From IMG/VR virus record IMGVR_UViG_3300042473_001265, positions 276,173 through 340,172 of that record: a DNA stretch of 64,000 bases. The stretch is one strand, 5' to 3'. The notes beneath the pieces were generated by a model. The model was not told the origin of the DNA. It made no database searches and saw only the letters and a list, made by a program, of their open reading frames with translations. Shown here piece by piece: positions 19,645-60,873 of this stretch. The number at the start of each line of letters is the position of its first letter. The stretch's first letter is position 1. Position numbers and translations under genes: made by a program.

Positions 19645-19673
19645 TTGACCCAAAATCGCCATTCTGCTATAAT
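19645..19673 (+). promoter_or_regulatory. Sigma70-type early promoter
   Basis: TTGACC-17 nt-TATAAT. Confidence 0.9.
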
Positions 19674-19679
19674 ACAGTT

Positions 19680-19913
19680 ATGAAATTAGATGTTAACGAA
19701 ATTTTGCAGTGGGCCGGCGCTGTATTCATAGTGGCCGGGCATAGCCTGAACGCCATGGGCCCGGAGGCTTACCCCTACAATATACTTACATTCTTTGTGG
19801 GAACAATACTGTTTCTAGCATGGACTATTCGTGTTGCAAATAAACCACAAATGTTTGTGAATCTTGTAAGTGTAGCCATTGGCTTTTCTGGGCTGGTAAA
19901 AGCATTTGGTTGA
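19680..19913 (+). CDS. Small membrane protein (three hydrophobic segments)
   Basis: Start moved to ATG 19680, 6 nt after the -10; stop TGA lies in the next -35. Confidence 0.7.
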   Translation: MKLDVNEILQWAGAVFIVAGHSLNAMGPEAYPYNILTFFVGTILFLAWTIRVANKPQMFVNLVSVAIGFSGLVKAFG

Positions 19914-19938
19914 CTCAAAATTGCCATTCTGCTATAAT
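19910..19938 (+). promoter_or_regulatory. Sigma70-type early promoter
   Basis: TTGACT-17 nt-TATAAT; spacer nearly identical to 19645. Confidence 0.9.
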
Positions 19939-19968
19939 TAATGCATAAACAGCAAACAGGAGCCAGAG

Positions 19969-20193
19969 ATGATCAAGCAATTTGTCCAAGTTAGTGCCCA
20001 CAGAGACAGCAACAATTTTGCTCATTGCAGTAATCTAAGCCTGATGGCTGATCGCGATATGAGCGCCACACAGGCCCTGCACTACCTGCAGGTCATGGCC
20101 GATGACTATGCCCAGCGCGGATATGCCATCGAATGGATCCGCGAAGACTTTGATGCAGTGTACGAAGAAATGTACGGAGAATTGTTTGCCTAA
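19969..20193 (+). CDS. Hypothetical protein
   Basis: SD CAGGAG and own promoter. Confidence 0.75.
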   Translation: MIKQFVQVSAHRDSNNFAHCSNLSLMADRDMSATQALHYLQVMADDYAQRGYAIEWIREDFDAVYEEMYGELFA

Positions 20194-20199
20194 TTTTGG

Positions 20200-20228
20200 T
20201 TGACCCAAAATTGCCATTCTGCTATAAT
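20200..20228 (+). promoter_or_regulatory. Sigma70-type early promoter
   Basis: TTGACC-17 nt-TATAAT. Confidence 0.9.
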
Positions 20229-20258
20229 ATACATACACAGACACAAAAGGAGTTGATT

Positions 20259-20480
20259 ATGGGCTACAAGGTACTGGCAGACAAATTCGAGACAGACCTG
20301 ATGCGTGTCAAATACGGTCCACGGGCGGGACTTGAAGGTCCGTTCAACTTCTCGGGTCGTGTGCTCTACTATGATGTCAAACAAGGTCAGTACTATGATC
20401 CAACCACAGACTTCTATGTGGAACGCGACGAGATGGACATGATCAACAACAGTTTGATGGCGGTACTGGCGGCAGCATGA
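20259..20480 (+). CDS. Hypothetical protein
   Basis: Start moved to ATG 20259 after SD AAGGAG. Confidence 0.75.
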   Translation: MGYKVLADKFETDLMRVKYGPRAGLEGPFNFSGRVLYYDVKQGQYYDPTTDFYVERDEMDMINNSLMAVLAAA

Positions 20481-20662
20481 TATCAATCCATCCTGATCTT
20501 AATCTGTTTGAAGTCATGCTGGTGCAGGAGCACTATCGAAAGCGTGGCATCAAGTGTTACACCTTGACCAAAGGCAACGATTGCATCTGGGCTTACCATG
20601 GCGCGATCAACGAGTATTTTATTTTTCGCAACGGCCAAATTGCCGACATTCAAATTGACTAA
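20477..20662 (+). CDS. Hypothetical protein
   Basis: ATGA overlap. Confidence 0.65.
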   Translation: MISIHPDLNLFEVMLVQEHYRKRGIKCYTLTKGNDCIWAYHGAINEYFIFRNGQIADIQID

Positions 20663-20672
20663 GGAGTATGTT

Positions 20673-20948
20673 ATGAATATCCAAGAAATCAACACTGCCA
20701 TCATTCAAGGCCCATTTACCAACGATCAGCTGACCAGCATTGTAGACGCAGTGCGATTTGCTCGTAGTCAACTCACTCGCCGCAACACTGGATCCTTTGT
20801 GATTGGTACTCGCGTCAAGTTTCACAATCGTAAAACTGGTGTGACCTATACCGGAACAGTCAACAAGGTCAAGCTGAAGAATATTCTGGTCGACACCGAT
20901 GTTGGTGTTCGATACAATGTTCCGGCTGCCATGTTGGAAACAGTATAA
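20673..20948 (+). CDS. Hypothetical protein with SH3-like C-terminus
   Basis: Start moved to ATG 20673 after SD AAGGAG; IGTRVKF...GTVNKV. Confidence 0.7.
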   Translation: MNIQEINTAIIQGPFTNDQLTSIVDAVRFARSQLTRRNTGSFVIGTRVKFHNRKTGVTYTGTVNKVKLKNILVDTDVGVRYNVPAAMLETV

Positions 20949-20964
20949 TTGACTGTGCTTGCAA

Positions 20965-21129
20965 ATGAAACAATCAACTTTTCGTCTGTGGTTAACACAG
21001 ATGTGGATGGAAAATCGCGAAGAACATCAGGCCCATCGAGAGCCTGTTGTCAGCCAACAAGAGTATTTTAACCGATACAAATATTGGCTTAAACGAGAGT
21101 ATAAACATCAGCAACGCAACAGTAAATAA
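20965..21129 (+). CDS. Small hypothetical protein (54 aa, MKQSTFRLWL...)
   Basis: Not in ORF track; fills the gap and ends 1 nt before the ligase ATG. Confidence 0.6.
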   Translation: MKQSTFRLWLTQMWMENREEHQAHREPVVSQQEYFNRYKYWLKREYKHQQRNSK

Positions 21130-21130
21130 C

Positions 21131-22507
21131 ATGAACAAAATAGATTTTAGCACAAAAGAATTTGAAGGGATCAAGTTGGCAGCAGACTGGATTCGAGATC
21201 TTGAAAGCAGCGACAGTAGATTACACAAAGAATCTGTGATCGAAAAAGCCTATGTGGCCTCACAACTTGGCAGCGCCAGTGCTCAATGCTTTTTGTTCAA
21301 CTGCTATCAGGCCTACAACCCTTTCTATGTGTTCGGCGTCAAACAAATACCCGAGACTACTGGACTTGAGAACCAACCCAACAACTGGCCTGTGTTCTGG
21401 GCCTTGTGTGAAGCACTGCGCACTCGTAGCTTGACCGGACACGAAGCTCGTGATCGTATTGCGGCCGTGAGCCAAGAGTTTGACAGTGCCGAATGGAACA
21501 TGTTGTGTCGTCGAGTGCTGATCAAAGACCTGCGATGCGGCATCAGTGAAAAGACCATCAACAAAGTTGTGGGCCGAACAGAATGGAAGATCCCTACCTT
21601 TACTTGTCAGCTGGCACAGGACTCCACCGACCACCCCAAGAAGATGAAGGGCATCAAACGCCTGGAAGTCAAATTGGACGGTGTGCGTGTGATTGCAGTG
21701 GTGTCGGGCAATAGCTGTGTGTTGTACAGCCGCAATGGCAAGGAGTTTGAAAACTTTCCGCAGATTGCTGAGGCTATCTTGGACAACCGTCGGGCATTCC
21801 AACACGGTCGAGGCACAGGTGGACACTTTGTGTTGGATGGTGAAATTGTAGGTGAGAATTTCCAAGCCTTGATGAAACAGGCACAACGCAAAAGCAATGC
21901 CAAAACAACTGGTATGGTTTATCACATTTTTGATATCATTCCATTGGATGCACTCAAAGAAGGCCATTGCAACTTGCAACAGCACAAACGTATAGCATGG
22001 CTAGAAAGTGCAAAAACGGTGTTGGACGAAACCGATTGTTTGCGTATCATGCCGGGTATGGATGTGAACCTGGACACTGCGGAAGGACATGATGTTATGC
22101 GCAGGTTTGCTGAAGCGTCAGTTGAGCAAGGATATGAAGGCATCATGATTAAAAATCTCGATGCTCCGTACGAATGCAAACGCAGTGATCACTGGATGAA
22201 ATGGAAACCCACCATCACAGTGGATTTGACCATTGTGGGTTTTGAAGAAGGAACTGGTCGCAATGCAGGCCGGTTGGGTGCTATAATTTACGAAGGAGTT
22301 GATAATGAACGAAATATTCGGGTTAATGTTGGTACTGGCTATAGTGATAATGATCGTGATGAGTTTTGGGCTGCCCGGGATCAGTTACTTGGTGTCATTG
22401 GCGAAATCCAAGCTGATGCAGTTACTCAAAATCAAGACGGATCATACAGTTTGAGATTCCCTAGGCATGTTCGGTTCCGTGGATTTGAAGCCGGGGAGAA
22501 ACTGTAA
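21131..22507 (+). CDS. ATP-dependent DNA ligase
   Basis: Motif I EVKLDGVR, LDGEI, EGIMIK, WMKWK, OB-fold SLRFPR; start moved to ATG 21131. Confidence 0.95.
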   Translation: MNKIDFSTKEFEGIKLAADWIRDLESSDSRLHKESVIEKAYVASQLGSASAQCFLFNCYQAYNPFYVFGVKQIPETTGLENQPNNWPVFWALCEALRTRSLTGHEARDRIAAVSQEFDSAEWNMLCRRVLIKDLRCGISEKTINKVVGRTEWKIPTFTCQLAQDSTDHPKKMKGIKRLEVKLDGVRVIAVVSGNSCVLYSRNGKEFENFPQIAEAILDNRRAFQHGRGTGGHFVLDGEIVGENFQALMKQAQRKSNAKTTGMVYHIFDIIPLDALKEGHCNLQQHKRIAWLESAKTVLDETDCLRIMPGMDVNLDTAEGHDVMRRFAEASVEQGYEGIMIKNLDAPYECKRSDHWMKWKPTITVDLTIVGFEEGTGRNAGRLGAIIYEGVDNERNIRVNVGTGYSDNDRDEFWAARDQLLGVIGEIQADAVTQNQDGSYSLRFPRHVRFRGFEAGEKL

Positions 22508-22626
22508 TGCATTGGCTACTGGTATTGATCTTGGCATTTGTTAACCTGCCGCTGGCCCTGGGGTTGGCAGCAATTTTTATATTTTTTGGCAAACAAACAA
22601 AAAATTAATCTAACAAGGAATTGAAA

Positions 22627-22800
22627 ATGGAAAAATTTATGGAATGGTTTGGTCGGCACCGTAAGACGATTGGATACACTGTCGGTGGTGTTAACTTAGG
22701 AGCTGGCATTGCCGCAATTGCCGGTGGCAGTGTTTGGCCTGGGATATTATGGTTAGTCTTGGGCGCTGCAATAATTTTAGATGCTAGGATGTTCAAATGA
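22627..22800 (+). CDS. Small two-helix membrane protein (57 aa)
   Basis: SD AAGGA; hydrophobic; ATGA overlap with next gene. Confidence 0.6.
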   Translation: MEKFMEWFGRHRKTIGYTVGGVNLGAGIAAIAGGSVWPGILWLVLGAAIILDARMFK

Positions 22801-23348
22801 TTTCAATGAAAGAATGGATGGAATTGGTCGACTATAAGATCACCGAAGGCAGTGCATACGGCTGGTCATGCTACGGTCCCGATGCTTATACACTAGATTC
22901 GTGGAACGGTGTTCAAGGCGAAGGCGGATACAGTTTCAGCATTGTGTTCAGTACTGAATCTGCACAAACAGCGCATCAAGTGTCGGCATACGACTACACC
23001 AACAATCGTGCTTACCGAATGATCAATCCAGACTATGCAGAGCAGTATCATAACGAAGCCAAGTCTAGAAATGTGCCGGCTAATCAAGCCTGGGACAATG
23101 TTGACTATGTGGATTTGGAAGTGGCAGACGACTTTATTCAAAAGTGCCTGGCCATTCGCGCCGGTGAGGATTATGACACACGAGTACAGATTACAGTTGA
23201 CTTTTCAGATGAAGATCTGTTGAAGTACATGAAACTGGCACACGAGCGTGATATCACATTCAACGAATTGGTGGTGCAGGCCTTGACCGAGGCCATTCAA
23301 CTCCGCGACGCGAACCCAGAAAGATTTGGTCAGTTGTACAACGATTAA
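22797..23348 (+). CDS. Hypothetical protein
   Basis: 183 aa ORF in a coupled run. Confidence 0.75.
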   Translation: MISMKEWMELVDYKITEGSAYGWSCYGPDAYTLDSWNGVQGEGGYSFSIVFSTESAQTAHQVSAYDYTNNRAYRMINPDYAEQYHNEAKSRNVPANQAWDNVDYVDLEVADDFIQKCLAIRAGEDYDTRVQITVDFSDEDLLKYMKLAHERDITFNELVVQALTEAIQLRDANPERFGQLYND

Positions 23349-23364
23349 GCACTTGGAATAACAT

Positions 23365-23559
23365 ATGAACAAGAAACTTGAAATTGATTTTGAAACAGCA
23401 GACCGCATCACAGTGCTCACACTGAAAGAACAGCGCAAGTATCTCAAAAAAGAACTGGCCGACTTCAAAAAAGGCGAATACCTGCATCCTGAAGATGTAA
23501 GCGGAAACACAATCATGATCCATCACTTGGATGCTGTGATCAAACATTTTGGTGGCTAA
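23365..23559 (+). CDS. Hypothetical protein
   Basis: 64 aa ORF abutting next gene. Confidence 0.65.
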   Translation: MNKKLEIDFETADRITVLTLKEQRKYLKKELADFKKGEYLHPEDVSGNTIMIHHLDAVIKHFGG

Positions 23560-24000
23560 ATGAAAATTGGACTCAGTTACAGCCGATGTGTTCGAGACAT
23601 TGCGGAAGGTCGTGTGGACATTGACGATGTGCTGGTTATCATTGCTCGTACAGATTTTGATCCCAATGACGACGAGCAATGGGCAAACATGTGGTCGGCC
23701 TACGGCGGCGGCTCGCCTAGATTTGATTCTATTACGGGCTTTAGTCGTAGTGCTCCAGAGTGGGCTGGTCAAACTGACGAAGATCTTTTCCGTAGTGTGA
23801 GCGTAGGCTTATGGAAGTTGGGCAAGCTGCACCAGCCACGCAAATTTGGCGCAAATCCGAGTCGGCGTGGTGAATTTTGGTTGGAAGCAGTGCTGCCTGA
23901 TTCTGAACTGGAATCACGCCCCGCAGTAAAAGACGCATGGGATCGGTTTCAGATGCTGGCCGGATTAACCAACACAAAGTTGGATCGAGATTATCAATGA
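23560..24000 (+). CDS. Hypothetical protein
   Basis: 146 aa ORF. Confidence 0.7.
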   Translation: MKIGLSYSRCVRDIAEGRVDIDDVLVIIARTDFDPNDDEQWANMWSAYGGGSPRFDSITGFSRSAPEWAGQTDEDLFRSVSVGLWKLGKLHQPRKFGANPSRRGEFWLEAVLPDSELESRPAVKDAWDRFQMLAGLTNTKLDRDYQ

Positions 24001-24461
24001 AAAAGGTGTATTATGAAAAAATTGGACGGCGGTATCGGCCTGTGGCTGAGTATGATAGCAATCTTTTGGATAGTTTCCATCGAGGTAGTCACCTTGTCTG
24101 CGTATACCCCGGGGGACAATCCCGTAGGTTTAATGTGGAACCTAACCATGCGGCCATGATTGCCGCTGGACGGCTGGCTGAAGATGCCATCTGTCAGGCC
24201 CTACACAAGGCCAGTGAAATGCGGCCACAAAAAACTCCCATCACTCCGGGTCAACTCAAGGCCTGGCAAAAATTAGCCAAGGAGTTTGGTGATGAATTGT
24301 GTACATTACAGCATGCCAGTGCCAGAGATTTGGCCGAAGCAGGTGTCAAGGCCATGCAGGCCGAAGCTGACAAACTGATGAGTCATCCCGCAGTGGTTGA
24401 CGCATGGGAGAAATTTATGTTAACATGTGAACTTACTAAGGAGAGAAAAAATGGCAACTAA
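23997..24461 (+). CDS. Hypothetical protein
   Basis: Start moved to ATG 23997 (ATGA overlap). Confidence 0.7.
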   Translation: MKKVYYEKIGRRYRPVAEYDSNLLDSFHRGSHLVCVYPGGQSRRFNVEPNHAAMIAAGRLAEDAICQALHKASEMRPQKTPITPGQLKAWQKLAKEFGDELCTLQHASARDLAEAGVKAMQAEADKLMSHPAVVDAWEKFMLTCELTKERKNGN

Positions 24462-24663: not shown

Positions 24664-24673
24664 GGACAACAAC

Positions 24674-25354: not shown

Positions 25355-25383
25355 TTGACAACACTGGTTGCTACTGTTATAAT
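25355..25383 (+). promoter_or_regulatory. Sigma70-type promoter
   Basis: TTGACA-17 nt-TATAAT. Confidence 0.85.
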
Positions 25384-53700: not shown

Positions 53701-54291
53701 ATGCCCCATCTAGTCCCAATGGTAATCGAGCAAACCTCCAAAGGCGAGCGCAGTTACGACATCTACAGCCGTCTGCTCAAAGATCGTATTGTGATGTTGG
53801 ATACCGAAGTCAGTGATCACAGTGCCAGCTTGATCGTTGCACAAATGTTATTTTTGGAGAGTGAAAATCCCGACGCAGATATCCTGTTTTACATCAACAG
53901 CCCAGGCGGTGTTATTACCGCAGGTATGAGCATTTATGACACAATGAACTTTATCAAATGCGATGTCAGCACCATTGTGATGGGACAAGCCTGCTCAATG
54001 GGGTCATTTTTGGCACAGGCTGGCACAGCGGGCAAACGACTGATGCTGCCACATGCACGACACATGATACACCAACCGTCGGGTGGTGCCCGTGGCATGG
54101 CCAGTGACATTGAAATCAGCTACAAAGAAATCATGCATATGAAAAAGATGCTGACCGATCTGTATGTCAAGCACAACAGCCGTGGCAAAACCTATGAGGA
54201 ATTTGAGCGCGACATGGACCGAGACACCTTTATGAGTGCAGCGGAAGCGCTGGATTATGGGTTGATTGATAAAATTGTGGAAAAGCGCTGA
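53701..54291 (+). CDS. clpP: ATP-dependent Clp protease proteolytic subunit
   Basis: [38 protein letters not shown]. Confidence 0.96.
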
Positions 54292-54299
54292 AATAACAG

Positions 54300-54328
54300 T
54301 TGACCAATAAATCCATTTGTCGTATAAT
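54300..54328 (+). promoter_or_regulatory. Sigma70-type early promoter
   Basis: TTGACC-17 nt-TATAAT. Confidence 0.88.
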
Positions 54329-54352
54329 TAACACTTAGCAACAAGGAGTCGT

Positions 54353-54713: not shown

Positions 54714-54738
54714 AAAACCCGTCTGATTGGCGGGTTTT
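54714..54738 (+). terminator. Intrinsic terminator
   Basis: AAAACCCGTC/GGCGGGTTTT stem. Confidence 0.8.
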
Positions 54739-54744: not shown

Positions 54745-54773
54745 GTTGACTCAAAATGCTCTTTTTGCTATAA
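54745..54773 (+). promoter_or_regulatory. Sigma70-type early promoter
   Basis: TTGACT-17 nt-TATAAT. Confidence 0.9.
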
Positions 54774-54804
54774 TAGTGGTATAGTAAGTAAAAAGGAGCG
54801 TGAA

Positions 54805-54993
54805 ATGGACTACACCAAACACCTGGAACTTGTCACCAATTGGGGCATGTACCACAACATCCAGGGCGGCATGCTGGAAACTTTACAGGCCATGCAGGCA
54901 TGTGGGTCAGACGAACTGCACCGCGACGAGCGCCTGGCCGTGCGTGAATTGATGGCAGGCTTTGGCCAATTGCTGGCGCCAGTTGACCAATAA
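54805..54993 (+). CDS. Hypothetical protein
   Basis: Start moved to ATG 54805; ends VDQ* across the next -35. Confidence 0.7.
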   Translation: MDYTKHLELVTNWGMYHNIQGGMLETLQAMQACGSDELHRDERLAVRELMAGFGQLLAPVDQ

Positions 54994-55011
54994 TTCCCAA
55001 AGTGCTATAAT
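54983..55011 (+). promoter_or_regulatory. Sigma70-type early promoter
   Basis: TTGACC-17 nt-TATAAT. Confidence 0.9.
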
Positions 55012-55041
55012 AGTGGCATAGTAAGTAAAAAGGATGTCAAT

Positions 55042-55371
55042 ATGAACGCAACTGAACTGGACTCTAAAGCCGCACCGTTTGCATGGCTCGCCGCCAGAGA
55101 TGCAGCAATAAAAAGTTATGCTGCCAGCACATTGTACACTGAAGCTCAAAAAATTCGTGCAGAGCGCATGAAGTTGGGACTGGAGATGGTGTACTCCGTT
55201 AAGAGTGCTTTCCTCACTTATCGCAAGAAGTTTGTGACTATTAAATTGGATCAAGCTCAAGTGCGCGACCGTAAGACACTGGCTTTGCTGGAACAAGATT
55301 ATACTGCACAAGGCAACATTAGCAAAGTAATTACCGCACAAGGCATCACTTATCGTATTGCCCGCAGTTGA
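55042..55371 (+). CDS. Hypothetical protein
   Basis: Own promoter and SD; stop TGA lies in the next -35. Confidence 0.75.
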   Translation: MNATELDSKAAPFAWLAARDAAIKSYAASTLYTEAQKIRAERMKLGLEMVYSVKSAFLTYRKKFVTIKLDQAQVRDRKTLALLEQDYTAQGNISKVITAQGITYRIARS

Positions 55372-55396
55372 CTAATAATTCCCAATCGGTTATAAT
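55368..55396 (+). promoter_or_regulatory. Sigma70-type early promoter
   Basis: TTGACT-17 nt-TATAAT. Confidence 0.9.
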
Positions 55397-55426
55397 AGTG
55401 GCATAGTAAGTAAACAGGAGCAGACA

Positions 55427-55681
55427 ATGATTGTTAAAACAGGTGATGTGATTCGCAGTTACGATTTCAAACCCATGCTGGGTCGTGAAGATTGCTTTGT
55501 GGAAGGTATGGTAATCGAAGCCACTGCCGAGCAAGGTTACGATGCTTATAAAATCCGTGTGACTCGGGACTCCTGGTCAGATGCTGAAGACAAAGGTCGT
55601 TTTGGCAAAGTCATCTTTGTGCCTGTGGCAGTGGCCTACAACGACTTTCCGGGTCGTGTGATGAATCTGAGCCGTGTCTAA
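55427..55681 (+). CDS. Hypothetical protein
   Basis: SD CAGGAG. Confidence 0.75.
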   Translation: MIVKTGDVIRSYDFKPMLGREDCFVEGMVIEATAEQGYDAYKIRVTRDSWSDAEDKGRFGKVIFVPVAVAYNDFPGRVMNLSRV

Positions 55682-55686
55682 AACGG

Positions 55687-55715
55687 TTGACTAATATTCA
55701 CCAAAGTGCTATAAT
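55687..55715 (+). promoter_or_regulatory. Sigma70-type early promoter driving the paralogue array
   Basis: TTGACT-17 nt-TATAAT. Confidence 0.9.
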
Positions 55716-55745
55716 TAACACTTGAACAGCAACAAGGAATCGACT

Positions 55746-55946
55746 ATGACACGATATGTTCACATTGTTTATGTCCACCCCGTAGAACTTGGTCTGCCCA
55801 ACCTGTCGAAGGTCAAGTCGGAACAAGAATTTGACACTTGGAAACAGGCAATGGGGTATGTTGAACACTTCAATGCTCACGCAAAAGACGGTGTTGAGGC
55901 CGTGTACTACGGCAGGGTCAATGATGCCACAGGAGAATTAGAATGA
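55746..55946 (+). CDS. Hypothetical protein
   Basis: Start moved to ATG 55746 after AAGGA. Confidence 0.7.
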   Translation: MTRYVHIVYVHPVELGLPNLSKVKSEQEFDTWKQAMGYVEHFNAHAKDGVEAVYYGRVNDATGELE

Positions 55947-56155: not shown

Positions 56156-56397
56156 ACGAACGAATTCTAGAACTGTTGAAACAGGCATCTAAACTTGCCA
56201 ACACCGATGACAACAAAGATATTGACCGCAATTTTGATATGATTGTGGCAGAAAAGTTCGCCGAACTGATTGTGAAAGAATGTTTGAATATTGTTATGCT
56301 TACACACAACGAAGGCAATGCAGATAATTTTTCATACGACGATGCACTTGATCATGTGTTTAGTAACATGAAAGAACATTTCGGAGTTGAATCGTGA
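56152..56397 (+). CDS. MNERI/KFAELIV/HFGVE family paralogue 1
   Basis: All three conserved blocks present. Confidence 0.85.
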   Translation: MNERILELLKQASKLANTDDNKDIDRNFDMIVAEKFAELIVKECLNIVMLTHNEGNADNFSYDDALDHVFSNMKEHFGVES

Positions 56398-56597
56398 AAG
56401 TGACCCATCCCTACACCTTGATAAAGCGGCGTATTGATGTTGTGGCCCGAGTGCCAGCCTGGGCGGTTGGAGAGATAAACAAAGGCGATCTGGTCATACG
56501 TCTGGATGCTCAAACTGTTTTTTTGCGAGATAAAGGCAGATACAAGGTGGGCGAATCCTACACCGAGTTCTGGGGCTACACAGGAGAAAATGCATGA
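56394..56597 (+). CDS. Hypothetical protein
   Basis: GTGA/ATGA-coupled; not a family member. Confidence 0.65.
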   Translation: MKVTHPYTLIKRRIDVVARVPAWAVGEINKGDLVIRLDAQTVFLRDKGRYKVGESYTEFWGYTGENA

Positions 56598-56923
56598 ACA
56601 AACGAATTCAACAACTTGCCGAACAGGCTACATCTTACAATAACAGTGATGGTTGGCTTTTTGATAAAGAAAAGTTCGCTGAACTGATTGTGGCTGAATG
56701 TTTGGCACAGGTTGCCCGGGTGGATGACATGTTGGAAGATGAGCCTGCACAACATGCGGCAGTGGCCTGGGTGGCCCGGTCGATTGCCGACCATTTTGGA
56801 GTTGCGAAACCCCAGTCAGACTGGGATCAAGAAGCAGCTGAATTTATTGCCGCAGAGGATAAAAAGGTTGCCAGCAGATACGGATATGTCCCAAAACTTC
56901 ATCCATCAGAATGGAAAGACTAA
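56594..56923 (+). CDS. Family paralogue 2, with C-terminal extension
   Basis: MNKRIQQLAEQA, EKFAELIVAEC, DHFGVAK. Confidence 0.85.
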   Translation: MNKRIQQLAEQATSYNNSDGWLFDKEKFAELIVAECLAQVARVDDMLEDEPAQHAAVAWVARSIADHFGVAKPQSDWDQEAAEFIAAEDKKVASRYGYVPKLHPSEWKD

Positions 56924-57138
56924 TGAACGAACGAATTAAAGAACTTTATACACAAGTCTGTATGGAACAGAATCTTCCGTTCACACTTGAACATAACAGT
57001 GCGTATATGTTAGATGCATTTGCAGACAAGTTCGCCGAGTTGATTGTGCGGGAATACTCTTACGATGTGATGAATTTACACGGGGCGAGTCCAGAGCGAG
57101 TAGCGATGGCTGCTAAACATTGGGAAGTTGAACTATGA
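56923..57138 (+). CDS. Family paralogue 3
   Basis: MNERIKEL, DKFAELIVREY, KHWEVEL; start moved to 56923. Confidence 0.8.
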   Translation: MNERIKELYTQVCMEQNLPFTLEHNSAYMLDAFADKFAELIVREYSYDVMNLHGASPERVAMAAKHWEVEL

Positions 57139-57365
57139 ACCTACGAATTAAACAACTGGCTGAACAATGCTGGGACAAGCGTCCAGAAGGCCAATTACAT
57201 TTTGACAACGAAAAATTCGCCGAATTGATTGTTCAGGAATGTATATCAGTTATTAATACTAAGGCTACCGAAGTTCCTGTTGAAGATGAATATGAAAGAA
57301 TGTGGAAGATGGGAACGGAATTTGCTGTATATCAGATTGATAAACATTTTGGAGTTGAAGAATGA
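57135..57365 (+). CDS. Family paralogue 4
   Basis: MNLRIKQLAEQC, EKFAELIVQEC, KHFGVEE. Confidence 0.85.
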   Translation: MNLRIKQLAEQCWDKRPEGQLHFDNEKFAELIVQECISVINTKATEVPVEDEYERMWKMGTEFAVYQIDKHFGVEE

Positions 57366-57622
57366 ATCAACGAATTCGAGCTCTTGCTGAAAAAGCAAAC
57401 ATTGAGTTTACCTATGACCCAACAGAGACACCTGTCAGAGCATTTGTCGAGTGTTGGGAAGATGATCTTGAAAAGTTCGTTGACATGATTGTGAAGGAAT
57501 GTATCGCTCAATGTGAAAGCCAGAACACAGTCATTACCACAGATATAGGCACAGAAGCGTGGGGAGAAATTTCTGATGCGGTAGAGCAGATTAAACGACA
57601 TTTTTACGGAGTTGAAGAATGA
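57362..57622 (+). CDS. Family paralogue 5
   Basis: MNQRIRALAEKA, EKFVDMIVKEC, HFYGVEE. Confidence 0.85.
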   Translation: MNQRIRALAEKANIEFTYDPTETPVRAFVECWEDDLEKFVDMIVKECIAQCESQNTVITTDIGTEAWGEISDAVEQIKRHFYGVEE

Positions 57623-57855
57623 ACTTACGAATTCAACAACTTGCCGAACAGGCTAGGCAATATGCTGAATCCAAAATGCATCTAACCGGATGGAACTATA
57701 TTGCCGAGTATAACGAAAAGTTCGCCCAGTTGATTGTGCGGGAATGTATGGATGCAGTGGGTGATGGACCAATGCAAAGACCAGAAATTCAAAGGATCAA
57801 AGCCAAGTTTGGGGTTGAGTATTACAAGCCAATTGAAAAAGCATTTGGGAGTTGA
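57619..57855 (+). CDS. Family paralogue 6
   Basis: MNLRIQQLAEQA, EKFAQLIVREC, KFGVE. Confidence 0.85.
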   Translation: MNLRIQQLAEQARQYAESKMHLTGWNYIAEYNEKFAQLIVRECMDAVGDGPMQRPEIQRIKAKFGVEYYKPIEKAFGS

Positions 57856-57858
57856 ATC

Positions 57859-58254
57859 GTGAACATAACTGTATACAGCTGGAATCTACTAAAAGAATCC
57901 TGTGAGCGTTGGTCGGTGCCCAGAGACTTTGCCGACCCCATGCTGAACTATCTGGTGTATGGTTATGCGCCAGGTAGTTGTTTCTCTGCGGTGTTGGCCA
58001 ATGACTTTTTTAGAGCAATTGGATCCAGCCATCCCAGTAACACTGTGGAAGCATTCAAGGCCTTGTCTGGTTGGATCCAAGATACTATGCCTCGTGAAGC
58101 ATTCGGCAGCTACGAAACTGTTCGACAGTGGTGTCAGCTTGATGCTGGGACTCGCCGAGCGATCCTTGAACGTCAGGGGCTGATCTATACCCAGCATGAA
58201 GAAGTGTTCAAGATTCTACGGAATGAGCATGCTGTGGAACCTGTATTATACTAA
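57859..58254 (+). CDS. Hypothetical protein
   Basis: GTG start after GGAG; PGSCFSAVLANDF. Confidence 0.7.
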   Translation: MNITVYSWNLLKESCERWSVPRDFADPMLNYLVYGYAPGSCFSAVLANDFFRAIGSSHPSNTVEAFKALSGWIQDTMPREAFGSYETVRQWCQLDAGTRRAILERQGLIYTQHEEVFKILRNEHAVEPVLY

Positions 58255-58268
58255 CACGGAGTTGAACC

Positions 58269-58568
58269 ATGATGCAAGATTTCATGTATGAGCAAACTCG
58301 AGTCACTGTGACCGACACATGGGATGACGAGATATCACAGTCTGTGATTGCAGCCGCAGTCAATGCGCCTCGAGTCAGCTACAGGATTTATTATTCCCAG
58401 GACAACCTGACCCGTAGGATTTTTGTTCATCGCGGCTGGCCCAACTGCACACCCGCAGAGATTGACGCATTGTTGGGCTTGGGATTTGTATTTGCACAAC
58501 CCGGTGATGCAGACAACATTCCCAACCAAGCCGTAGAGGAACATGAAATTGAAGGAATCGAACCATGA
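58269..58568 (+). CDS. Hypothetical protein
   Basis: SD GGAG; 99 aa. Confidence 0.65.
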   Translation: MMQDFMYEQTRVTVTDTWDDEISQSVIAAAVNAPRVSYRIYYSQDNLTRRIFVHRGWPNCTPAEIDALLGLGFVFAQPGDADNIPNQAVEEHEIEGIEP

Positions 58569-58687
58569 AAGTCTACAAGCACAGCAACGGTAAAACAAGT
58601 CTATTTCCTGAACACATTCCCCAGGGTTGGGTAGTTTTTCTAAATCCCAACACATTTGACATTGTATGGCGTAGGAGTGGATCATGA
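58565..58687 (+). CDS. Small hypothetical protein (40 aa, MKVYKHSNG...)
   Basis: ATGA-coupled at both ends. Confidence 0.6.
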   Translation: MKVYKHSNGKTSLFPEHIPQGWVVFLNPNTFDIVWRRSGS

Positions 58688-58926
58688 CAATTGAACAAGA
58701 ATATCTAGAAAAATACATAAATCCTCGGATTAAAAAATTGTTTGAACAGGCCAATGGACAATTTTACATTTCTCCTGGCAACCAAACTCCGCGATTCGTG
58801 TTTGAACACAACAACATGCTTGATTTTATTGACTTGATTGTGCAGGAATGTGCCCGGATTGCTGACACAGCAGAGCCCTATCAAACCAGCGATTTGATTT
58901 TGAAACACTTTGGAGTTGAATCATGA
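58684..58926 (+). CDS. Family paralogue 7, with N-terminal extension
   Basis: INPRIKKLFEQA, DLIVQEC, KHFGVES. Confidence 0.8.
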   Translation: MTIEQEYLEKYINPRIKKLFEQANGQFYISPGNQTPRFVFEHNNMLDFIDLIVQECARIADTAEPYQTSDLILKHFGVES

Positions 58927-59042
58927 CCGAAGGAGAACGAGCAGGACGCTGGGCTATGATATATCTCTATACGGCGTTGTTTGCTTTATGGTTTAATATT
59001 GTTGCCATTGCGGTTTGGCACATCCGGGAGTGGTTTTTATGA
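58923..59042 (+). CDS. Small membrane peptide (39 aa)
   Basis: ATGA-coupled at both ends; one TM. Confidence 0.55.
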   Translation: MTEGERAGRWAMIYLYTALFALWFNIVAIAVWHIREWFL

Positions 59043-59269
59043 ACGAACGAATTCGAGAACTTGCCGAACAGGCTGGAATTGAATTTACCTATGACCCAAC
59101 TGAGACTCCTATGCGAGCTTTTGTGGAATGTTGGGAAGATGAGATGGCAAAGTTCGCCCAGTTGATTGTGCAGGAATGTGGTCGAGCATTGAATCCCATG
59201 TTGCGTGACATGATCAGTCGCGGCCAGGCCGTAGACATGATTAAACAACATTTCGGAGTTGAAGAATGA
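59039..59269 (+). CDS. Family paralogue 8
   Basis: MNERIRELAEQA, AKFAQLIVQEC, QHFGVEE; start moved to 59039. Confidence 0.85.
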   Translation: MNERIRELAEQAGIEFTYDPTETPMRAFVECWEDEMAKFAQLIVQECGRALNPMLRDMISRGQAVDMIKQHFGVEE

Positions 59270-59778
59270 AATCACATTATACCTGCGGAAAATGTAACCT
59301 GTTGTTAGAAGCAGGTGACAAACATTTTTTTACTCACAGTCTTAAAAAAGTATCTAATAATAGTAATTTAACAGTTATTGGACAATGTAAAGCCTGCGCC
59401 AAACAATATGCTACAAAATGGCGTAGTGACATTAAGGCCAAAGGATTAGTTCGTAGTCAAAAGACAACAATAGCATTAGCAGGTGCAGTTACAGGAACCG
59501 TGTATGTTATCGGTACTGATAGTCCCGGAGCTCCTTATAAAATTGGAATAACTTCGGGATCAGATACTCGAAAAAGAAAAGCAGCATTACAAACAGCACA
59601 CTGGATGGATCTTAAAGAAGTTTGGAAATCAGACTTGTTGTACCGAGCAGATATTATTGAAAAAAAATTACACAAACATTTTGAAAAGAAATGGGTGAGG
59701 GGAGAATGGTTCAATATCACAAAAGACGATATTACCAATATTCCAAACTTAATAGAACATTTTGGTGTGGAAGAATGA
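59266..59778 (+). CDS. Zn-finger plus GIY-YIG (T5orf172-like) nuclease
   Basis: CGKC...CKAC; VYVIG...YKIGIT...KRKAALQT...EKKLH...RGEWF; ends EHFGVEE. Confidence 0.82.
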   Translation: MKSHYTCGKCNLLLEAGDKHFFTHSLKKVSNNSNLTVIGQCKACAKQYATKWRSDIKAKGLVRSQKTTIALAGAVTGTVYVIGTDSPGAPYKIGITSGSDTRKRKAALQTAHWMDLKEVWKSDLLYRADIIEKKLHKHFEKKWVRGEWFNITKDDITNIPNLIEHFGVEE

Positions 59779-60005
59779 GTGACTCCATCATACCCGTAAC
59801 TCAGTTTGCTACCAGCTTCACTGGCGTGCTGCCCATTGCCACTGTGGGCAAAGGTGTTGTCAAACAGGAAAGTTGGCAACAGACCACTTATCCCAATGGT
59901 GCCACGGTCACCAGGATTTATCACAACAGCATTGAAGTGTATGATAACCGTGCAGTTGTGACCCGGCACAATGAACCAAACATCATTGACATATTGATCA
60001 AGTAA
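59775..60005 (+). CDS. Hypothetical protein
   Basis: Start moved to ATG 59775 (ATGA overlap). Confidence 0.6.
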   Translation: MSDSIIPVTQFATSFTGVLPIATVGKGVVKQESWQQTTYPNGATVTRIYHNSIEVYDNRAVVTRHNEPNIIDILIK

Positions 60006-60047
60006 TATTAAAATAACACACCAGGAGAAAAGACGATTTTGCTCTGG

Positions 60048-60076
60048 TTGACCATTAATTCCCGTTCTGCTATAAT
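60048..60076 (+). promoter_or_regulatory. Sigma70-type early promoter
   Basis: TTGACC-17 nt-TATAAT. Confidence 0.9.
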
Positions 60077-60104
60077 ATACACATAAACAGCAAACGGAGC
60101 AGAC

Positions 60105-60263
60105 ATGCAGATGACACCGGAACAGAAGGCAGTAGAGATTGAGCGTTTGACAGCTGAATACGAGTGGCTGACTCTCATCAGCTGTAACGGTCGTTACGGT
60201 GGCAACATTTTTATCAAGCAGGCTGCTATTTCTGAAAAATTGCGTGAGTTAGCCAACGATTGA
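60105..60263 (+). CDS. Small hypothetical protein (52 aa)
   Basis: SD GGAG; stop TGA lies in the next -35. Confidence 0.65.
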   Translation: MQMTPEQKAVEIERLTAEYEWLTLISCNGRYGGNIFIKQAAISEKLRELAND

Positions 60264-60288
60264 CCATTAATTCCCATTCTGCTATAAT
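60260..60288 (+). promoter_or_regulatory. Sigma70-type early promoter
   Basis: TTGACC-17 nt-TATAAT; nearly identical to 60048, including the leader. Confidence 0.9.
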
Positions 60289-60318
60289 ATACACATAAAC
60301 AGCAAACAGGAGAGCCAA

Positions 60319-60534
60319 ATGAGCAAGTTTGAAGTTCGTTTTTTTCGTAGTGAAGATGCAGCATCTTCCAGCTGGCTGGTGACTGAAGTGCTGGCGGACG
60401 ACGGCGAAGGCAATCGCACCAGCGATATCCGTGCTGAATTTGACCCCACCCCTGCGGGGCAGGAACAGGCCCGCGACCTGGCTCATGCGCTGAACCGCGA
60501 AATTGAACAAGAAATCTACGCAGAATTTGGTTGA
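60319..60534 (+). CDS. Acidic hypothetical protein
   Basis: SD CAGGAG. Confidence 0.7.
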   Translation: MSKFEVRFFRSEDAASSSWLVTEVLADDGEGNRTSDIRAEFDPTPAGQEQARDLAHALNREIEQEIYAEFG

Positions 60535-60541
60535 GGCAATT

Positions 60542-60694
60542 ATGAAACCCGTGTCTTTTGTTATACAACTACCGCGTCAGCGTCGCCGAGCTGTGGAACT
60601 GTACAGCCGCGACACGCCGTTCAAATCCCGTGTTGAGCAGTCACGAACAGTGTACACTCGTCGGGTCAAACATGCCAAACAATTACAAGAGTAA
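60542..60694 (+). CDS. Small basic protein, weak ArfA-like pattern
   Basis: TPFKSRVEQSRTVYTRRVKH; start moved to 60542. Confidence 0.55.
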   Translation: MKPVSFVIQLPRQRRRAVELYSRDTPFKSRVEQSRTVYTRRVKHAKQLQE

Positions 60695-60699
60695 ACCGT

Positions 60700-60855
60700 A
60701 TGACTATTCAACATTGGGATTATTTAAAAACTGCAATGGAAGTGCTGGAGTCTGGCCAAGCCAGTGACGCCAACACCATCAAAATACTCAAGATCATGAG
60801 CGAAATCTGTGCAATGAACGCACAAAAGATGACACAGCTTCTGGTTGACCAATAA
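60700..60855 (+). CDS. Small hypothetical protein (51 aa)
   Basis: Ends VDQ* across the next -35. Confidence 0.55.
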   Translation: MTIQHWDYLKTAMEVLESGQASDANTIKILKIMSEICAMNAQKMTQLLVDQ

Positions 60856-60873
60856 TTGCCATTCTGCTATAAT
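60845..60873 (+). promoter_or_regulatory. Sigma70-type early promoter
   Basis: TTGACC-17 nt-TATAAT. Confidence 0.9.

What the first reader, a model, noticed from the sequence alone, without database searches (positions are those of the whole stretch)
19645..60873. Promoter-ORF cassettes whose stop codon is the next promoter's -35 box
Eleven near-identical promoters (TTGAC[C/T]-17 nt-TATAAT, most followed by about 30 nt of leader ending in an SD) cluster at 19.6-20.2, 54.3-55.7 and 60.0-60.9 kb. ORFs end inside them: TGA within TTGAC at 19911, 55369 and 60261, and VDQ* across TTGACCAATAA at 54991 and 60853. A degenerate -35 also ends the ORF at 60532. Each gene is thus bounded by homologous promoter DNA, allowing exchange of whole expression units, reminiscent of the promoter cassettes reported to shuffle T4-type phage genes.
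Basis: partly seen in the sequence, partly recalled or inferred. Interest (0 to 1): 0.62.

Follow-up and report, generated by a model that had tools for sequence, protein, structure and literature searches.

The report
Shuffling promoter cassettes in a jumbo phage
A 340-kb uncultured lake-water phage carries repeated strong promoter-plus-leader modules between its small unknown genes, and relatives show genes gained, lost and swapped at these modules, as already described for T4-type phages.

Summary
Five upstream ORFs end inside them: TGA in the -35 at 19911, 55369 and 60261, and TAA at 54991 and 60853.

The window is the last 64 kb of a 340-kb, 98%-complete virus record from lake water. It has a T4-type capsid and portal, and its nearest cultured relatives are PA5oct/Rak2-like jumbo phages.

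The sites are sigma-70-type promoter plus leader modules of about 60 nt. They sit in front of small ORFan genes in variable regions.

Against a relative about 93% identical, 6 of 10 structural differences have a breakpoint in a module, although modules cover 2.1% of the DNA. Relatives at about 73% identity lose homology at the end of one promoter and carry other genes behind it. Two contigs 98.9% identical over 5.6 kb diverge completely inside a promoter. Some orthologous modules were replaced by copies of distant ones, and two cargo families sit behind modules in different regions.

This fits the published PeSL model of promoter-mediated shuffling, but only 2 of 11 units have the defining stem-loop. 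The stop-in-promoter feature is mostly tight packing. Promoter activity, timing and mini-circles remain untested.

The parts
19608..19630 (+). Terminator hairpin (C4/G4 stem followed by a T run), 15 nt upstream of promoter P19645
   Evidence: Sequence read. Fold of 19595-19675 gives z = -2.9. Conserved in L004, L008 and L010.
19645..19673 (+). Module P19645. It marks the left edge of a variable region. Homology with the 73% relatives ends at 19673/19674.
19680..19913 (+). Cargo ORF of 77 aa, a small hydrophobic protein (judged from the residues) with a weak DUF6552 match. Its ATG is 7 nt after the -10 box, so the mRNA is probably leaderless. Its TGA stop at 19911-19913 lies in the -35 box of P19910. 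Absent from the 73% relatives.
19910..19968 (+). Module P19910 (promoter 19910-19938 plus leader up to the ATG at 19969)
   Evidence: The ortholog's leader type recurs 36 kb away in G001 at 55/56 identity.
19969..20193 (+). Cargo ORF of 74 aa, an ORFan. Absent from L008, L010 and L011.
20200..20258 (+). Module P20200 plus leader. An 8-bp A/T hairpin spans the -35 box. L008 and L011 have no promoter at this place.
   Evidence: Fold z = -1.6.
20259..20480 (+). Conserved 73-aa gene (phrog_13298). Homology with the 73% relatives resumes at its ATG.
25355..25383 (+). Consensus promoter of a different sequence type (TTGACAAC...). G001 has an extra promoter-ORF cassette of about 590 bp here. The cassette is flanked by a direct repeat that runs from the tail of the upstream ORF into the -35 box; its first 36 nt are the window overlap 25328-25363.
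53701..54291 (+). ClpP-type protease gene, the conserved anchor to the left of the second variable region
   Evidence: Pfam CLP_protease, E = 1.6e-78. 342 relatives found in IMG/VR.
54300..54352 (+). Module P54300 plus leader, followed by ORFs 54353-54526 and 54527-54697
54714..54738 (+). Terminator hairpin just upstream of P54746
   Evidence: Fold z = -3.75. Present in L014 and L015.
54746..54804 (+). Module P54746 plus leader. Four lineages share the DNA up to its -10 box and each has a different leader and gene behind it.
54805..54993 (+). Cargo ORF of 62 aa. Absent from every distinct relative fetched; found only in G000 and one other locus, taken to be a 100%-identical contig. Its TAA stop at 54991-54993 lies in the spacer of P54983. 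The unit from 54775 to 54991 is missing in G001, which has one promoter here.
54983..55041 (+). Module P54983 plus leader
55042..55371 (+). Cargo ORF of 109 aa. G001 has it at 95% aa identity with a different leader and N-terminus. Its TGA stop at 55369-55371 lies in the -35 box of P55368.
55368..55426 (+). Module P55368 plus leader. Homology with G001 ends at 55396, the end of the -10 box. The orthologous module is only 39/56 identical.
55427..55681 (+). Cargo ORF of 84 aa. Absent from G001. A 50% identical homolog sits behind a module in L066.
55687..55745 (+). Module P55687 plus leader
55746..55946 (+). Cargo ORF of 66 aa. Absent from every distinct relative fetched; found only in G000 and one other locus, taken to be a 100%-identical contig. 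Homology with G001 resumes at the ATG of the next gene, at 55943.
60048..60104 (+). Module P60048 plus leader. Homology with G001 resumes at 60044, 4 nt before the -35 box.
60105..60263 (+). Cargo ORF of 52 aa. Its TGA stop at 60261-60263 lies in the -35 box of P60260.
60260..60318 (+). Module P60260 plus leader. It is 50/56 identical to P60048, one more than to its own ortholog in G001 (49/56).
60319..60534 (+). ORF of 71 aa that ends with TGA in a degenerate -35-like TTGAGG at 60531-60536. This may be a remnant half-module.
   Evidence: Degraded elements that keep only the -35 box are described for PeSLs. That this one is a remnant is inference.
60700..60855 (+). ORF of 51 aa. Its TAA stop at 60853-60855 lies in the spacer of P60845.
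60845..60903 (+). Module P60845 plus leader. It is 54/56 identical to a module at genome position 15101. G001 has an extra unit here, made of a 108-aa ORF, a promoter and a 28-aa ORF.
60904..61377 (+). Cargo ORF of 157 aa (phrog_1987). Homologs sit directly behind modules in other contexts in L010 and L081, and a further homolog lies in the ClpP-downstream region of L015.
59266..59778 (+). T5orf172/MUG113-domain gene, which I place among the GIY-YIG-like nucleases from my own knowledge. It is window-specific and lies at the right edge of the large difference 56175-59774. It could be a second driver of exchange.

Best explanation
The eleven sites are copies of a portable promoter-leader module about 60 nt long. 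Each module has the sequence GG, a TTGACY -35 box, a partly conserved 17-nt spacer with a TGn extended -10, TATAAT, and an A/C-rich leader of 24-32 nt with an AGGAG Shine-Dalgarno sequence followed by ATG. The host's sigma-70 RNA polymerase would read these modules early in infection. They drive small ORFan genes in the variable ('hyperplastic') regions of an uncultured 340-kb lake-water jumbo phage of the wider T4 superfamily.

Because the same module recurs between genes, it provides short patches of homology. At these patches the phage's own RecA/UvsX-type recombination system, or the host's, can delete, insert or replace whole promoter-gene units and can overwrite one module with another. 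This is the mechanism proposed for PeSL elements of T4-type phages.

The stop codons inside the promoters are a side effect. Genes are packed directly against the modules, and the module's first 11 nt carry TGA in one reading frame and, in most copies, TAA in a second. An ORF that runs into a module is therefore usually closed at once.

Shown here: the motif, its excess over chance, the stops, the cassette differences and where their breakpoints lie, module replacement, and the same cargo in different regions.

Inferred: promoter activity, early timing, homologous recombination as the cause, and any circular intermediate.
For: Motif and distribution:
- 11 exact sites against 0 expected.
- 40 sites genome-wide, all on the + strand.
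- 16 of 35 share at least 28/44 identity outside the two hexamers; random 44-mers give a best of about 18 and a maximum of 24.
- Cargo genes have no known function.

Identity of the phage:
- Gp23 capsid, E = 8e-99, and T4 portal, E = 7e-105.
- A RecA-family gene at genome position 248679-249449.
- No tyrosine or serine recombinase.

Window against G001 (about 93% nt identity):
- 8 of 20 breakpoints and 6 of 10 events lie in modules that cover 2.1% of the span. Naive binomial P = 4e-9 and 9e-7. Inside the variable region alone it is 6 of 12 against 7.8%, P = 1e-4.
- 'Two modules here, one module there' pattern at 54746/54983, at 25355 and at 60845.

More distant and very close pairs:
- 73% relatives: homology ends at 19673/19674 and different ORFs follow.
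- Four lineages have four different genes behind the ortholog of P54746.
- L010 and L011 are 98.9% identical over 5.6 kb, then unrelated from within a promoter onward.

Module replacement:
- Orthologous modules are only 39-40/56 identical in genomes about 93% alike.
- The G001 copy is 55/56 identical to a module 36 kb away.
- P60845 is 54/56 identical to the module at genome position 15101.
- Leaders are lineage-specific but uniform within a genome.

Cargo in different regions: 60904 family (E = 5e-24) and ORF99 family (E = 1e-40).

Independent support for the G001 arrangement: a Logan contig in run X24 joins the P55687-type leader to 55943 through the same 7 letters as G001.
Against: - Four of 10 differences from G001 have no link to promoters: the 3.7-kb and 2.8-kb insertions at 36172 and 39923-42766, the paralog array 56175-59774, and 62214-62558.
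- In several events only the left breakpoint is in a module, while the right one sits at a start codon (20259, 55943, 60903). Simple module-by-module crossover does not explain these on its own.
- In these regions nearly every intergenic gap that is not a gene overlap is a promoter. Selection for breakpoints that spare genes would therefore also enrich them at promoters, and the binomial P values overstate the case.
- Homology tracts are short and imperfect: mean 64% over 56 nt.
- All data are metagenome assemblies, and repeats can cause chimeric joins. This is a particular concern for L010.
- There is no transcript, timing or read-level evidence, and no circles could be looked for.
- The extended promoter similarity could partly reflect selection for strength or for a shared regulator.
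Confidence: 0.7

Rival explanations
1. The sites are ordinary strong early promoters whose similarity comes only from selection for promoter and translation strength or for a shared regulator. Gene turnover in these regions comes from illegitimate recombination, from ordinary homologous exchange between co-infecting relatives through flanking genes, or from nuclease-stimulated exchange. Breakpoints coincide with promoters only because viable breakpoints must be intergenic, and here intergenic DNA is promoter DNA.
For: - Four of 10 events are unrelated to promoters.
- Right-hand breakpoints fall at start codons rather than in modules.
- A T5orf172/GIY-YIG-like gene lies at the edge of the largest difference.
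- Homology tracts are short.
- The W/G001 difference at 54746-55041 is not a simple deletion product, because the leaders differ in type.
Against: - Indels are flanked by two modules in one genome and one module in the other.
- Orthologous modules were replaced by near-exact copies of modules 36 kb and about 322 kb away. Illegitimate recombination does not predict this.
- Most gene junctions in the array 55943-59778 carry no promoter, yet 6 of 12 breakpoints in the variable region are in modules.
Confidence: 0.2
2. The apparent shuffling is an assembly artefact. Metagenome assemblers joined different parts of one or several strains at the repeated modules.
For: - All relatives are metagenome contigs.
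- Logan contigs break at the modules.
- The right half of L010 resembles genes that in G000 lie at 261 kb and 118 kb, each behind a promoter.
Against: - The window's arrangement is found at 100% identity in contigs from at least five samples.
- The L015/L016 arrangement and the L006-L008 arrangement each recur in two or three samples.
- The G001 junction at 55943 recurs in an unrelated run.
- Shared exact tracts at the junctions are well under typical final k-mer sizes.
- Flanks differ by 1-7%, so the contigs represent different strains.
Confidence: 0.05
3. The modules are recognition sites of a dedicated site-specific, integron-like cassette recombinase.
For: The cassette-like units, the repeated boundary sequence and the single orientation resemble an integron array.
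Against: - There is no tyrosine integrase or serine recombinase in a 98%-complete genome.
- The boundary sequence is a textbook sigma-70 promoter rather than an imperfect palindrome.
- Breakpoints are spread over the module, from the -35 box to the ATG, rather than falling at one position.
Confidence: 0.03

Closest known systems
PeSLs (promoter-early stem-loops) of T4-type phages RB49/phi1 (Arbiol et al. 2010, PMC2839356), and of T4/PST and KVP40/nt-1 (Comeau et al. 2014, PMC4122927)
   Same: - Repeated near-consensus sigma-70 promoters with a Shine-Dalgarno sequence and start codon at the 3' end.
- The stop codon of the upstream gene lies at or near the element.
- They cluster in variable regions in front of ORFans.
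- They are associated with insertions, deletions and replacements between close relatives, including the pattern of 'one element in one genome, two elements flanking an ORF in the other'.
- Degraded half-elements also occur.
- The carrier phage has a T4-type capsid and portal.
   Different: - Only 2 of 11 units have a convincing stem-loop, and there it is a separate terminator upstream of the -35 box. The others fold no better than shuffled sequence.
- Stops lie inside the -35 box or spacer in 5 of 11 units, rather than in an AT-rich stretch upstream.
- The conserved part extends through the spacer and a lineage-specific leader.
- The host phage is an uncultured 340-kb freshwater jumbo phage nearest to the PA5oct, Rak2/CBB, Phosso and XaC1 types, not one of the T4-like phages studied.
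- Mini-circles, promoter activity and terminator activity were shown experimentally for PeSLs and are untested here.
T4 early promoters (from my own knowledge: about 40 strong sigma-70 promoters whose consensus extends beyond the hexamers)
   Same: These are strong host-polymerase promoters with conservation outside the -35 and -10 boxes, placed in front of small non-essential early genes.
   Different: - The -35 box here is the E. coli-type TTGAC, whereas T4 itself has TTTACW.
- The leader is conserved as well.
- Module copies 36-322 kb apart are 54-55/56 identical, which points to copying rather than convergence.
Morons of lambdoid phages (from my own knowledge: Juhala, Hendrix and colleagues; a self-contained promoter-gene-terminator unit inserted between two genes)
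   Same: An autonomous expression unit is inserted between conserved genes, and presence or absence varies among relatives.
   Different: Morons do not share a common boundary sequence that could serve as recombination homology, and they are usually expressed from the prophage. Here the boundaries are one repeated module in a virulent-type T4-superfamily genome.
Integron gene cassettes
   Same: An array of small genes in one orientation, separated by a repeated boundary element, with cassette-wise gain and loss.
   Different: Integron cassettes are promoterless, are bounded by attC sites and are moved by an IntI tyrosine recombinase. Here every unit brings its own promoter and no such recombinase is encoded.

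Membership tests
PeSL (promoter-early stem-loop) elements | Near-consensus sigma-70 promoter (-35 box, 17-nt spacer, -10 box) | tested here: met
   11 exact TTGACY-N17-TATAAT sites against 0 expected. 7 of 11 also have a TGn extended -10: six of the eight in 53-63 kb's column, and one of the three at 19.6-20.2 kb read from the matched sequences.
PeSL (promoter-early stem-loop) elements | A stable stem-loop within or next to the promoter that acts as a terminator or attenuator | tested here: not met
   Folds of all 11 units. Only 19595-19675 (z = -2.9) and 54700-54776 (z = -3.75) have a strong hairpin, and in both it is a terminator upstream of the -35 box. P20200 has a weak 8-bp A/T hairpin over the -35 box (z = -1.6). 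The other eight give z between -1.3 and +1.0. The feature is therefore met in 2 to 3 of 11 units and is not a constant part.
PeSL (promoter-early stem-loop) elements | Stop codon of the upstream gene at the 5' side, in an AT-rich stretch | tested here: inconclusive
   Stops lie inside the promoter in 5 of 11 units and 6-9 nt upstream in 3 of 11. The 5' flank is a short T- or A-run followed by GG, not a long AT-rich tract.
PeSL (promoter-early stem-loop) elements | Shine-Dalgarno sequence and start codon of the downstream gene at the 3' end | tested here: met
   10 of 11 units have an AGGAG-type Shine-Dalgarno sequence and an ATG 24-32 nt after the -10 box. P19645 is followed by an ATG after 6 nt.
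PeSL (promoter-early stem-loop) elements | Clustered in hyperplastic regions, immediately upstream of ORFans | tested here: met
   Cargo ORFs have no Pfam family over the cut-off and no functional PHROG match. Gene content downstream of ClpP differs among nearly all of the 80 related loci.
PeSL (promoter-early stem-loop) elements | Insertions, deletions and replacements between close relatives that abut or are flanked by the elements | tested here: met
   6 of 10 events and 8 of 20 breakpoints against G001 fall in modules. Junctions are shown at nucleotide level.
PeSL (promoter-early stem-loop) elements | Recombination between neighbouring elements yields mini-circles | not testable with these tools
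   All 24 runs that hold the region are kept as contigs only. The one apparent 'goes back' joint, 60249 to 60048, is a mapping ambiguity between two near-identical promoters.
PeSL (promoter-early stem-loop) elements | Demonstrated strong promoter activity early in infection | not testable with these tools
Activity is inferred from the consensus.
PeSL (promoter-early stem-loop) elements | Carried by a T4-like myovirus | tested here: inconclusive
   Gp23 capsid and T4-type portal are present. The nearest cultured capsids, at 65-71% identity, belong to jumbo phages of the Phosso, Vibrio 2.275.O, PA5oct, XaC1 and CBB types, not to the T4-like phages in which PeSLs were defined.
Integron cassette array | IntI-type tyrosine recombinase and attC boundary sites | tested here: not met
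   No PF00589 or PF00239 match in the 98%-complete genome. The boundaries are promoters and most lack any hairpin or palindrome.

The most novel reading that the evidence does not exclude
The modules may be more than passive homology. They could form a self-homogenising, genome-wide exchange network in a large clade of freshwater jumbo phages. Any gene placed behind a module would gain a promoter, a leader and a ribosome site. Its upstream neighbour would automatically be closed by stop triplets built into the module. Units and modules would move between variable regions tens to hundreds of kilobases apart, and between co-infecting phages, possibly as small circles. In this reading the system would work without the stem-loop that defines PeSLs and would be a general gene-capture device of jumbo phages, analogous in effect to an integron but run by general recombination.
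Probability: 0.3. Interest if true: 0.6.

Novelty: new variant of a known kind. Interest (0 to 1): 0.47.

Why it matters
Variable regions full of small unknown genes are where phages keep host-takeover and anti-defence functions, and how these regions turn over so quickly is only partly understood. The PeSL model has so far been documented in three pairs of cultured T4-like phages.

This window shows the same pattern in an abundant, uncultured freshwater jumbo-phage clade: 342 ClpP-anchored relatives were found in IMG/VR, and the region occurs in at least 24 lake-water runs. The data include nucleotide-level breakpoints, replacement of modules by distant copies, and the same cargo in different regions.

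The window also shows that the stem-loop is dispensable. That broadens what should be searched for in other phages. In practice the module gives a sequence tag for finding early genes and recently exchanged cargo in metagenomic jumbo phages.

Tried and rejected
- **Near-identity search of 19000-26000 against cultured phages:** no match. Protein searches show only distant cultured relatives.
- **Reads:** only Logan contigs were available. They break at the modules and give many joints in the paralog array 56-59 kb. They cannot show circles, ends or frequencies. The 'goes back' joint from 60249 to 60048 was rejected as ambiguity between two near-identical promoters. The joint from 54721 to 60045 in run X24 is suggestive, but the length of the matching side is not known, so it is not used as evidence.
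- **Second module cluster outside the window (genome 4-21 kb):** relatives found with a 401-aa anchor are so diverged that only the anchor aligns, so no breakpoints could be placed.
- **Simple 'deletion between P54746 and P54983' history for G001:** rejected, because G001's leader is of another type, identical to the P19910 type.
- **Stem-loop as a general part of the module:** rejected.
- **Integron-like mechanism:** rejected for lack of a recombinase.
- **Stop-in-promoter as a designed coupling signal:** considered and set aside. Two of three frames stop within the first 11 nt of most modules. Genome-wide only 11 of 40 promoters hold a stop: 10 from the script plus P60845 added by hand.
- **Not used:** the large protein searches, structure prediction and complex prediction. 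The question did not depend on them.

Full report
**1. Checking the observation**

They lie at 19645, 19910, 20200, 54300, 54746, 54983, 55368, 55687, 60048, 60260 and 60845, all on the + strand, and no match occurred in 100 shuffles.

Reading the three regions confirms each stop codon:
- TGA within TTGAC at 19911-19913, 55369-55371 and 60261-60263.
- TAA closing '..VDQ*' at 54991-54993 and 60853-60855.
- TGA in a degenerate TTGAGG at 60531-60536, ending ORF 60319-60534.

Ten sites are followed by a 24-32 nt A/C-rich leader with an AGGAG-type ribosome site and an ATG. At 19645 the ATG (19680) starts 7 nt after the -10 box, so that transcript would be leaderless.

'Near-identical' needs qualifying. 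Mean pairwise identity is 79% over the 29-nt promoter and 64% over 56 nt. The best pair among the eleven is 50/56 (P60048 and P60260), and the closest match to a copy elsewhere in the genome is 54/56.

Only 5 of 11 upstream ORFs stop inside a promoter. Three stop 6-9 nt before it, and three stop 42-63 nt before it. In two of those three cases, upstream of P19645 and P54746, a terminator hairpin lies in between.

**2. What the DNA is**

The window is the last 64 kb of a single 340,172-bp virus record. The record is classed 98% complete and is found in many lake-water metagenomes.
- It encodes a T4-type major capsid protein (PF07068, E = 8e-99) and a T4-type portal (PF07230, E = 7e-105).
- The nearest cultured capsids, at 65-71% identity, are from jumbo phages: Sinorhizobium phage Phosso, Vibrio phage 2.275.O, Pseudomonas phage PA5oct, Xanthomonas phage XaC1 and Pectobacterium phage CBB.
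- No cultured phage is close at DNA level.
- A 105-kb IMG/VR contig holds both the window's genes and genes from the start of the record. The record's ends therefore join, as expected for a circularly permuted genome.

Genome-wide there are 40 TTGAC-N16-19-TATAAT sites, all on the + strand. Sixteen of the 35 with a 17-nt spacer share at least 28 of 44 positions outside the two hexamers with another copy. Random 44-mers reach 18 on average and 24 at most. Nine of the window's eleven belong to this extended family.

The module runs from a GG before the -35 box to the start codon. In the window it has three leader subtypes, and one of these occurs only at the three adjacent promoters 54746, 54983 and 55368.

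The genes behind the modules are small ORFans. The only clear family match is phrog_1987, of unknown function, for 60904-61377.

**3. Test with relatives: the close relative G001**

IMG/VR holds many relatives. Contigs from at least five samples are 100% identical to the window across the clusters, so the window's own arrangement is not an assembly accident.

The closest distinct relative is a 46-kb contig, G001, about 93% identical. I rebuilt it from loci and aligned it to window 15249-63330. Ten structural differences separate the two. Six have a breakpoint in a promoter module:

1. At P25355, G001 has an extra promoter-ORF unit of about 590 bp. The unit is flanked by a direct repeat that runs from the tail of the upstream ORF into the -35 box; its first 36 nt are the window overlap 25328-25363.
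2. The window has an extra unit at 54775-54991. This is a leader, the 62-aa ORF and the next promoter, lying between P54746 and P54983. G001 has a single promoter here.
3. Homology ends at 55396, the last base of the -10 box of P55368. It resumes at the ATG of 55943. G001 lacks ORFs 55427 and 55746.
4. Homology resumes at 60044, 4 nt before P60048.
5. Between the leader of P60845 and the ATG at 60904, G001 has an extra 108-aa ORF, a second near-identical module and a 28-aa ORF. The TGA stop of that 108-aa ORF lies in the next -35 box.
6. The diverged block 52173-53684 ends just after the ClpP promoter.

Modules cover 2.1% of the compared span. Eight of 20 breakpoints and 6 of 10 events lie in them, giving naive binomial P = 4e-9 and 9e-7. 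Within the variable region alone it is 6 of 12 against 7.8%, P = 1e-4.

The other four events have no link to promoters:
- a 3.7-kb insertion in G001 at window position 36172;
- a 2.8-kb insertion in the window at 39923-42766;
- the block 56175-59774, inside an array of paralogous small genes;
- 62214-62558.

**4. Test with relatives: more distant and very close pairs**

- Relatives about 73% identical (L006-L008, L010, L011) align up to 19673/19674, the end of the -10 box of P19645. Alignment starts again at 20259, the ATG of the conserved 73-aa gene. In between, the window has two ORFs and two more modules, while those relatives have other ORFs behind their own modules.
- The upstream gene end and the ortholog of P54746 are shared by four lineages: the window, G001, L015 and L017. 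The terminator hairpin is shared by the first three, and L017 has a different hairpin. Each lineage has a different leader and a different first gene behind the promoter.
- L010 and L011 come from different samples. They are 98.9% identical over 5.6 kb, and their sequences part within a promoter, just after the -35 box. Beyond that they have nothing in common for more than 4 kb. The right part of L010 resembles genes that lie at 261 kb and 118 kb in this genome, each behind a promoter. This is either a large rearrangement at a module or a chimeric contig, and I cannot tell which.

**5. Exchange of the modules themselves, and mobile cargo**

The two genomes are about 93% alike, yet the orthologous modules at P54746 and P55368 are only 40/56 and 39/56 identical. 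The G001 copy of the first is 55/56 identical to another G001 module 36 kb away. The window's P60845 is 54/56 identical to the module at genome position 15101, about 322 kb away. P60260 is one position closer to its neighbour P60048 (50/56) than to its own ortholog (49/56), a margin too small to weigh on its own.

Across the clade, spacer and leader are lineage-specific but uniform within a genome. This is concerted evolution. Together with the breakpoints it points to copying between modules. A shared lineage-specific regulator could contribute to the same pattern.

Two cargo families occupy different regions in different lineages, each time directly behind a module:
- The 60904 family appears next to the 649-aa gene in L010 (34% identity, E = 5e-24) and behind a module in L081. 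A further homolog lies in the ClpP-downstream region of L015.
- The 99-aa ORF that follows P1 in L008 is 58% identical (E = 1e-40) to the ORF behind the ortholog of P54746 in L017.

**6. Mechanism**

The best-supported reading is that these are strong sigma-70-type promoter-leader modules whose repetition supplies portable homology. Recombination at them deletes, inserts or replaces promoter-gene units and overwrites modules.

The genome encodes a RecA/UvsX-family protein and no tyrosine or serine recombinase. This fits general recombination and speaks against an integron-like mechanism.

The stops inside the promoters follow from packing and from the module sequence. TGA sits in one frame of TTGAC, and TAA sits at +9 in a second frame of most copies. 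An ORF that runs into a module is therefore usually closed within 11 nt. Genome-wide, 11 of 40 promoters hold the upstream stop: one search's script counted 10, and I added P60845, whose 51-aa ORF it passed over, from the sequence read. Six of these are the TGA at +2 and three are the TAA at +9. I regard this as a by-product that makes the module a convenient boundary, not as a signal in itself.

Promoter activity, early timing, the recombination pathway and any circular intermediate are inferences.

**7. Weaknesses**

- In these regions nearly every non-overlapping gene junction carries a promoter. Selection for gene-sparing breakpoints would therefore also place them in promoters, and the P values are upper bounds on significance.
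- Several events have only one end in a module.
- The difference at 54746-55041 is not a simple deletion, because the leader types differ.
- A T5orf172/MUG113-domain gene, which I take from my own knowledge to be a GIY-YIG-like nuclease, lies at 59266-59778. It is window-specific and sits at the edge of the largest difference. It may drive exchange by another route.
- All comparisons rest on metagenome contigs. The G001 junction at 55943 is independently seen in a Logan contig of another run, with the same 7 letters between leader and ATG. The other variant junctions lack such a check.
- The reads tool offered contigs only, so circles could not be sought.

**8. Comparison with what is known**

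The closest known system is the PeSL element of T4-type phages. A PeSL is a near-consensus sigma-70 promoter combined with a stem-loop. The upstream stop lies at its 5' side and the ribosome site and start codon at its 3' end. PeSLs cluster before ORFans in hyperplastic regions, are associated with indels between close relatives, and form mini-circles.

Of these features:
- Met here: the promoter, the 3' end, the location and the link with indels.
- Not a constant part: the stem-loop. Only two units have a convincing hairpin (z = -2.9 and -3.75), one has a weak one, and eight fold like shuffled sequence.
- Not testable here: mini-circles and promoter activity.

The carrier has a T4-type capsid and portal but lies outside the T4-like phages in which PeSLs were described. 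A full-text search found no paper that links PeSLs to jumbo phages beyond one entry in a reference list. The degenerate -35 box at 60531-60536 resembles the 'half' PeSLs that keep only the -35 box.

**9. Verdict**

- The finding is a PeSL-like system without an obligatory stem-loop, in an abundant uncultured freshwater jumbo-phage clade. It is a new variant of a known kind.
- Interest is moderate. It extends a model that rests on few cases and offers nucleotide-level examples and a searchable tag, but the mechanism is already published and the key experiments remain to be done.

Noticed in passing
window 56152-59269: An array of at least seven paralogous small genes starting at 56152, 56594, 57135, 57362, 57619, 58684 and 59039. 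They are 76-109 aa long, have no Pfam match, and are packed with overlapping stop/start codons and no promoters between them. G001 has only one clear copy, and lake-water contigs show dozens of alternative joints within the array, so copy number looks highly variable among strains.
   Followed up: partly
window 19668-19682: The ATG of the 77-aa hydrophobic ORF starts 7 nt after the TATAAT of P19645 with no Shine-Dalgarno sequence. This predicts a leaderless mRNA. The arrangement is conserved in G001.
   Followed up: partly
window 59266-59778: A 170-aa gene with T5orf172/MUG113 domains (GIY-YIG-like nuclease family, by my own knowledge). It is absent from G001, and homology resumes at its stop codon. 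It may be a homing-type element.
   Followed up: partly
window 39923-42766: A 2.8-kb segment present in the window but not in G001. It holds ORFs 39992-40789 (+), 40772-42025 (-, 417 aa) and 42100-42789 (+), none with a clear family. The aligned blocks on either side overlap by about 20 nt in G001. No promoter module lies at either end.
   Followed up: partly
window 36172 (G001rc 21592-25276): G001 carries a 3.7-kb insertion between the stop of the + strand gene 35379-36176 and a shared hairpin terminator. Its content was not examined.
   Followed up: no
window 33140-33630, inside ORF 32018-34264: Alignment against G001 gives a ladder of hits offset by multiples of 66 nt. This indicates tandem 22-aa repeats inside the 748-aa protein of unknown function.
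   Followed up: no
window 53701-54291: A phage-encoded ClpP protease (Pfam E = 1.6e-78). It is highly conserved, at 74-100% aa identity in the 80 relatives kept of 342 found in IMG/VR, and makes a useful anchor gene for this clade.
   Followed up: partly
G000 ends (window 64000 and genome position 1): One 105-kb IMG/VR contig (3300042559_002030) contains genes from both ends of the 340-kb record at a consistent distance. The record is therefore a linear cut of a circularly permuted, essentially complete genome.
   Followed up: partly
genome 109415 (outside the window): One of the consensus promoters is followed within about 10 nt by what reads like the start of a tRNA gene. If so, the same promoter type drives the phage's tRNA cluster.
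   Followed up: no
window 62587-62610: A perfect 10-bp G/C-rich hairpin with T runs on both strands, which would act as a bidirectional terminator. It lies where the + strand early-type genes meet the - strand genes 62619-63344 and 63355-63954.
   Followed up: no
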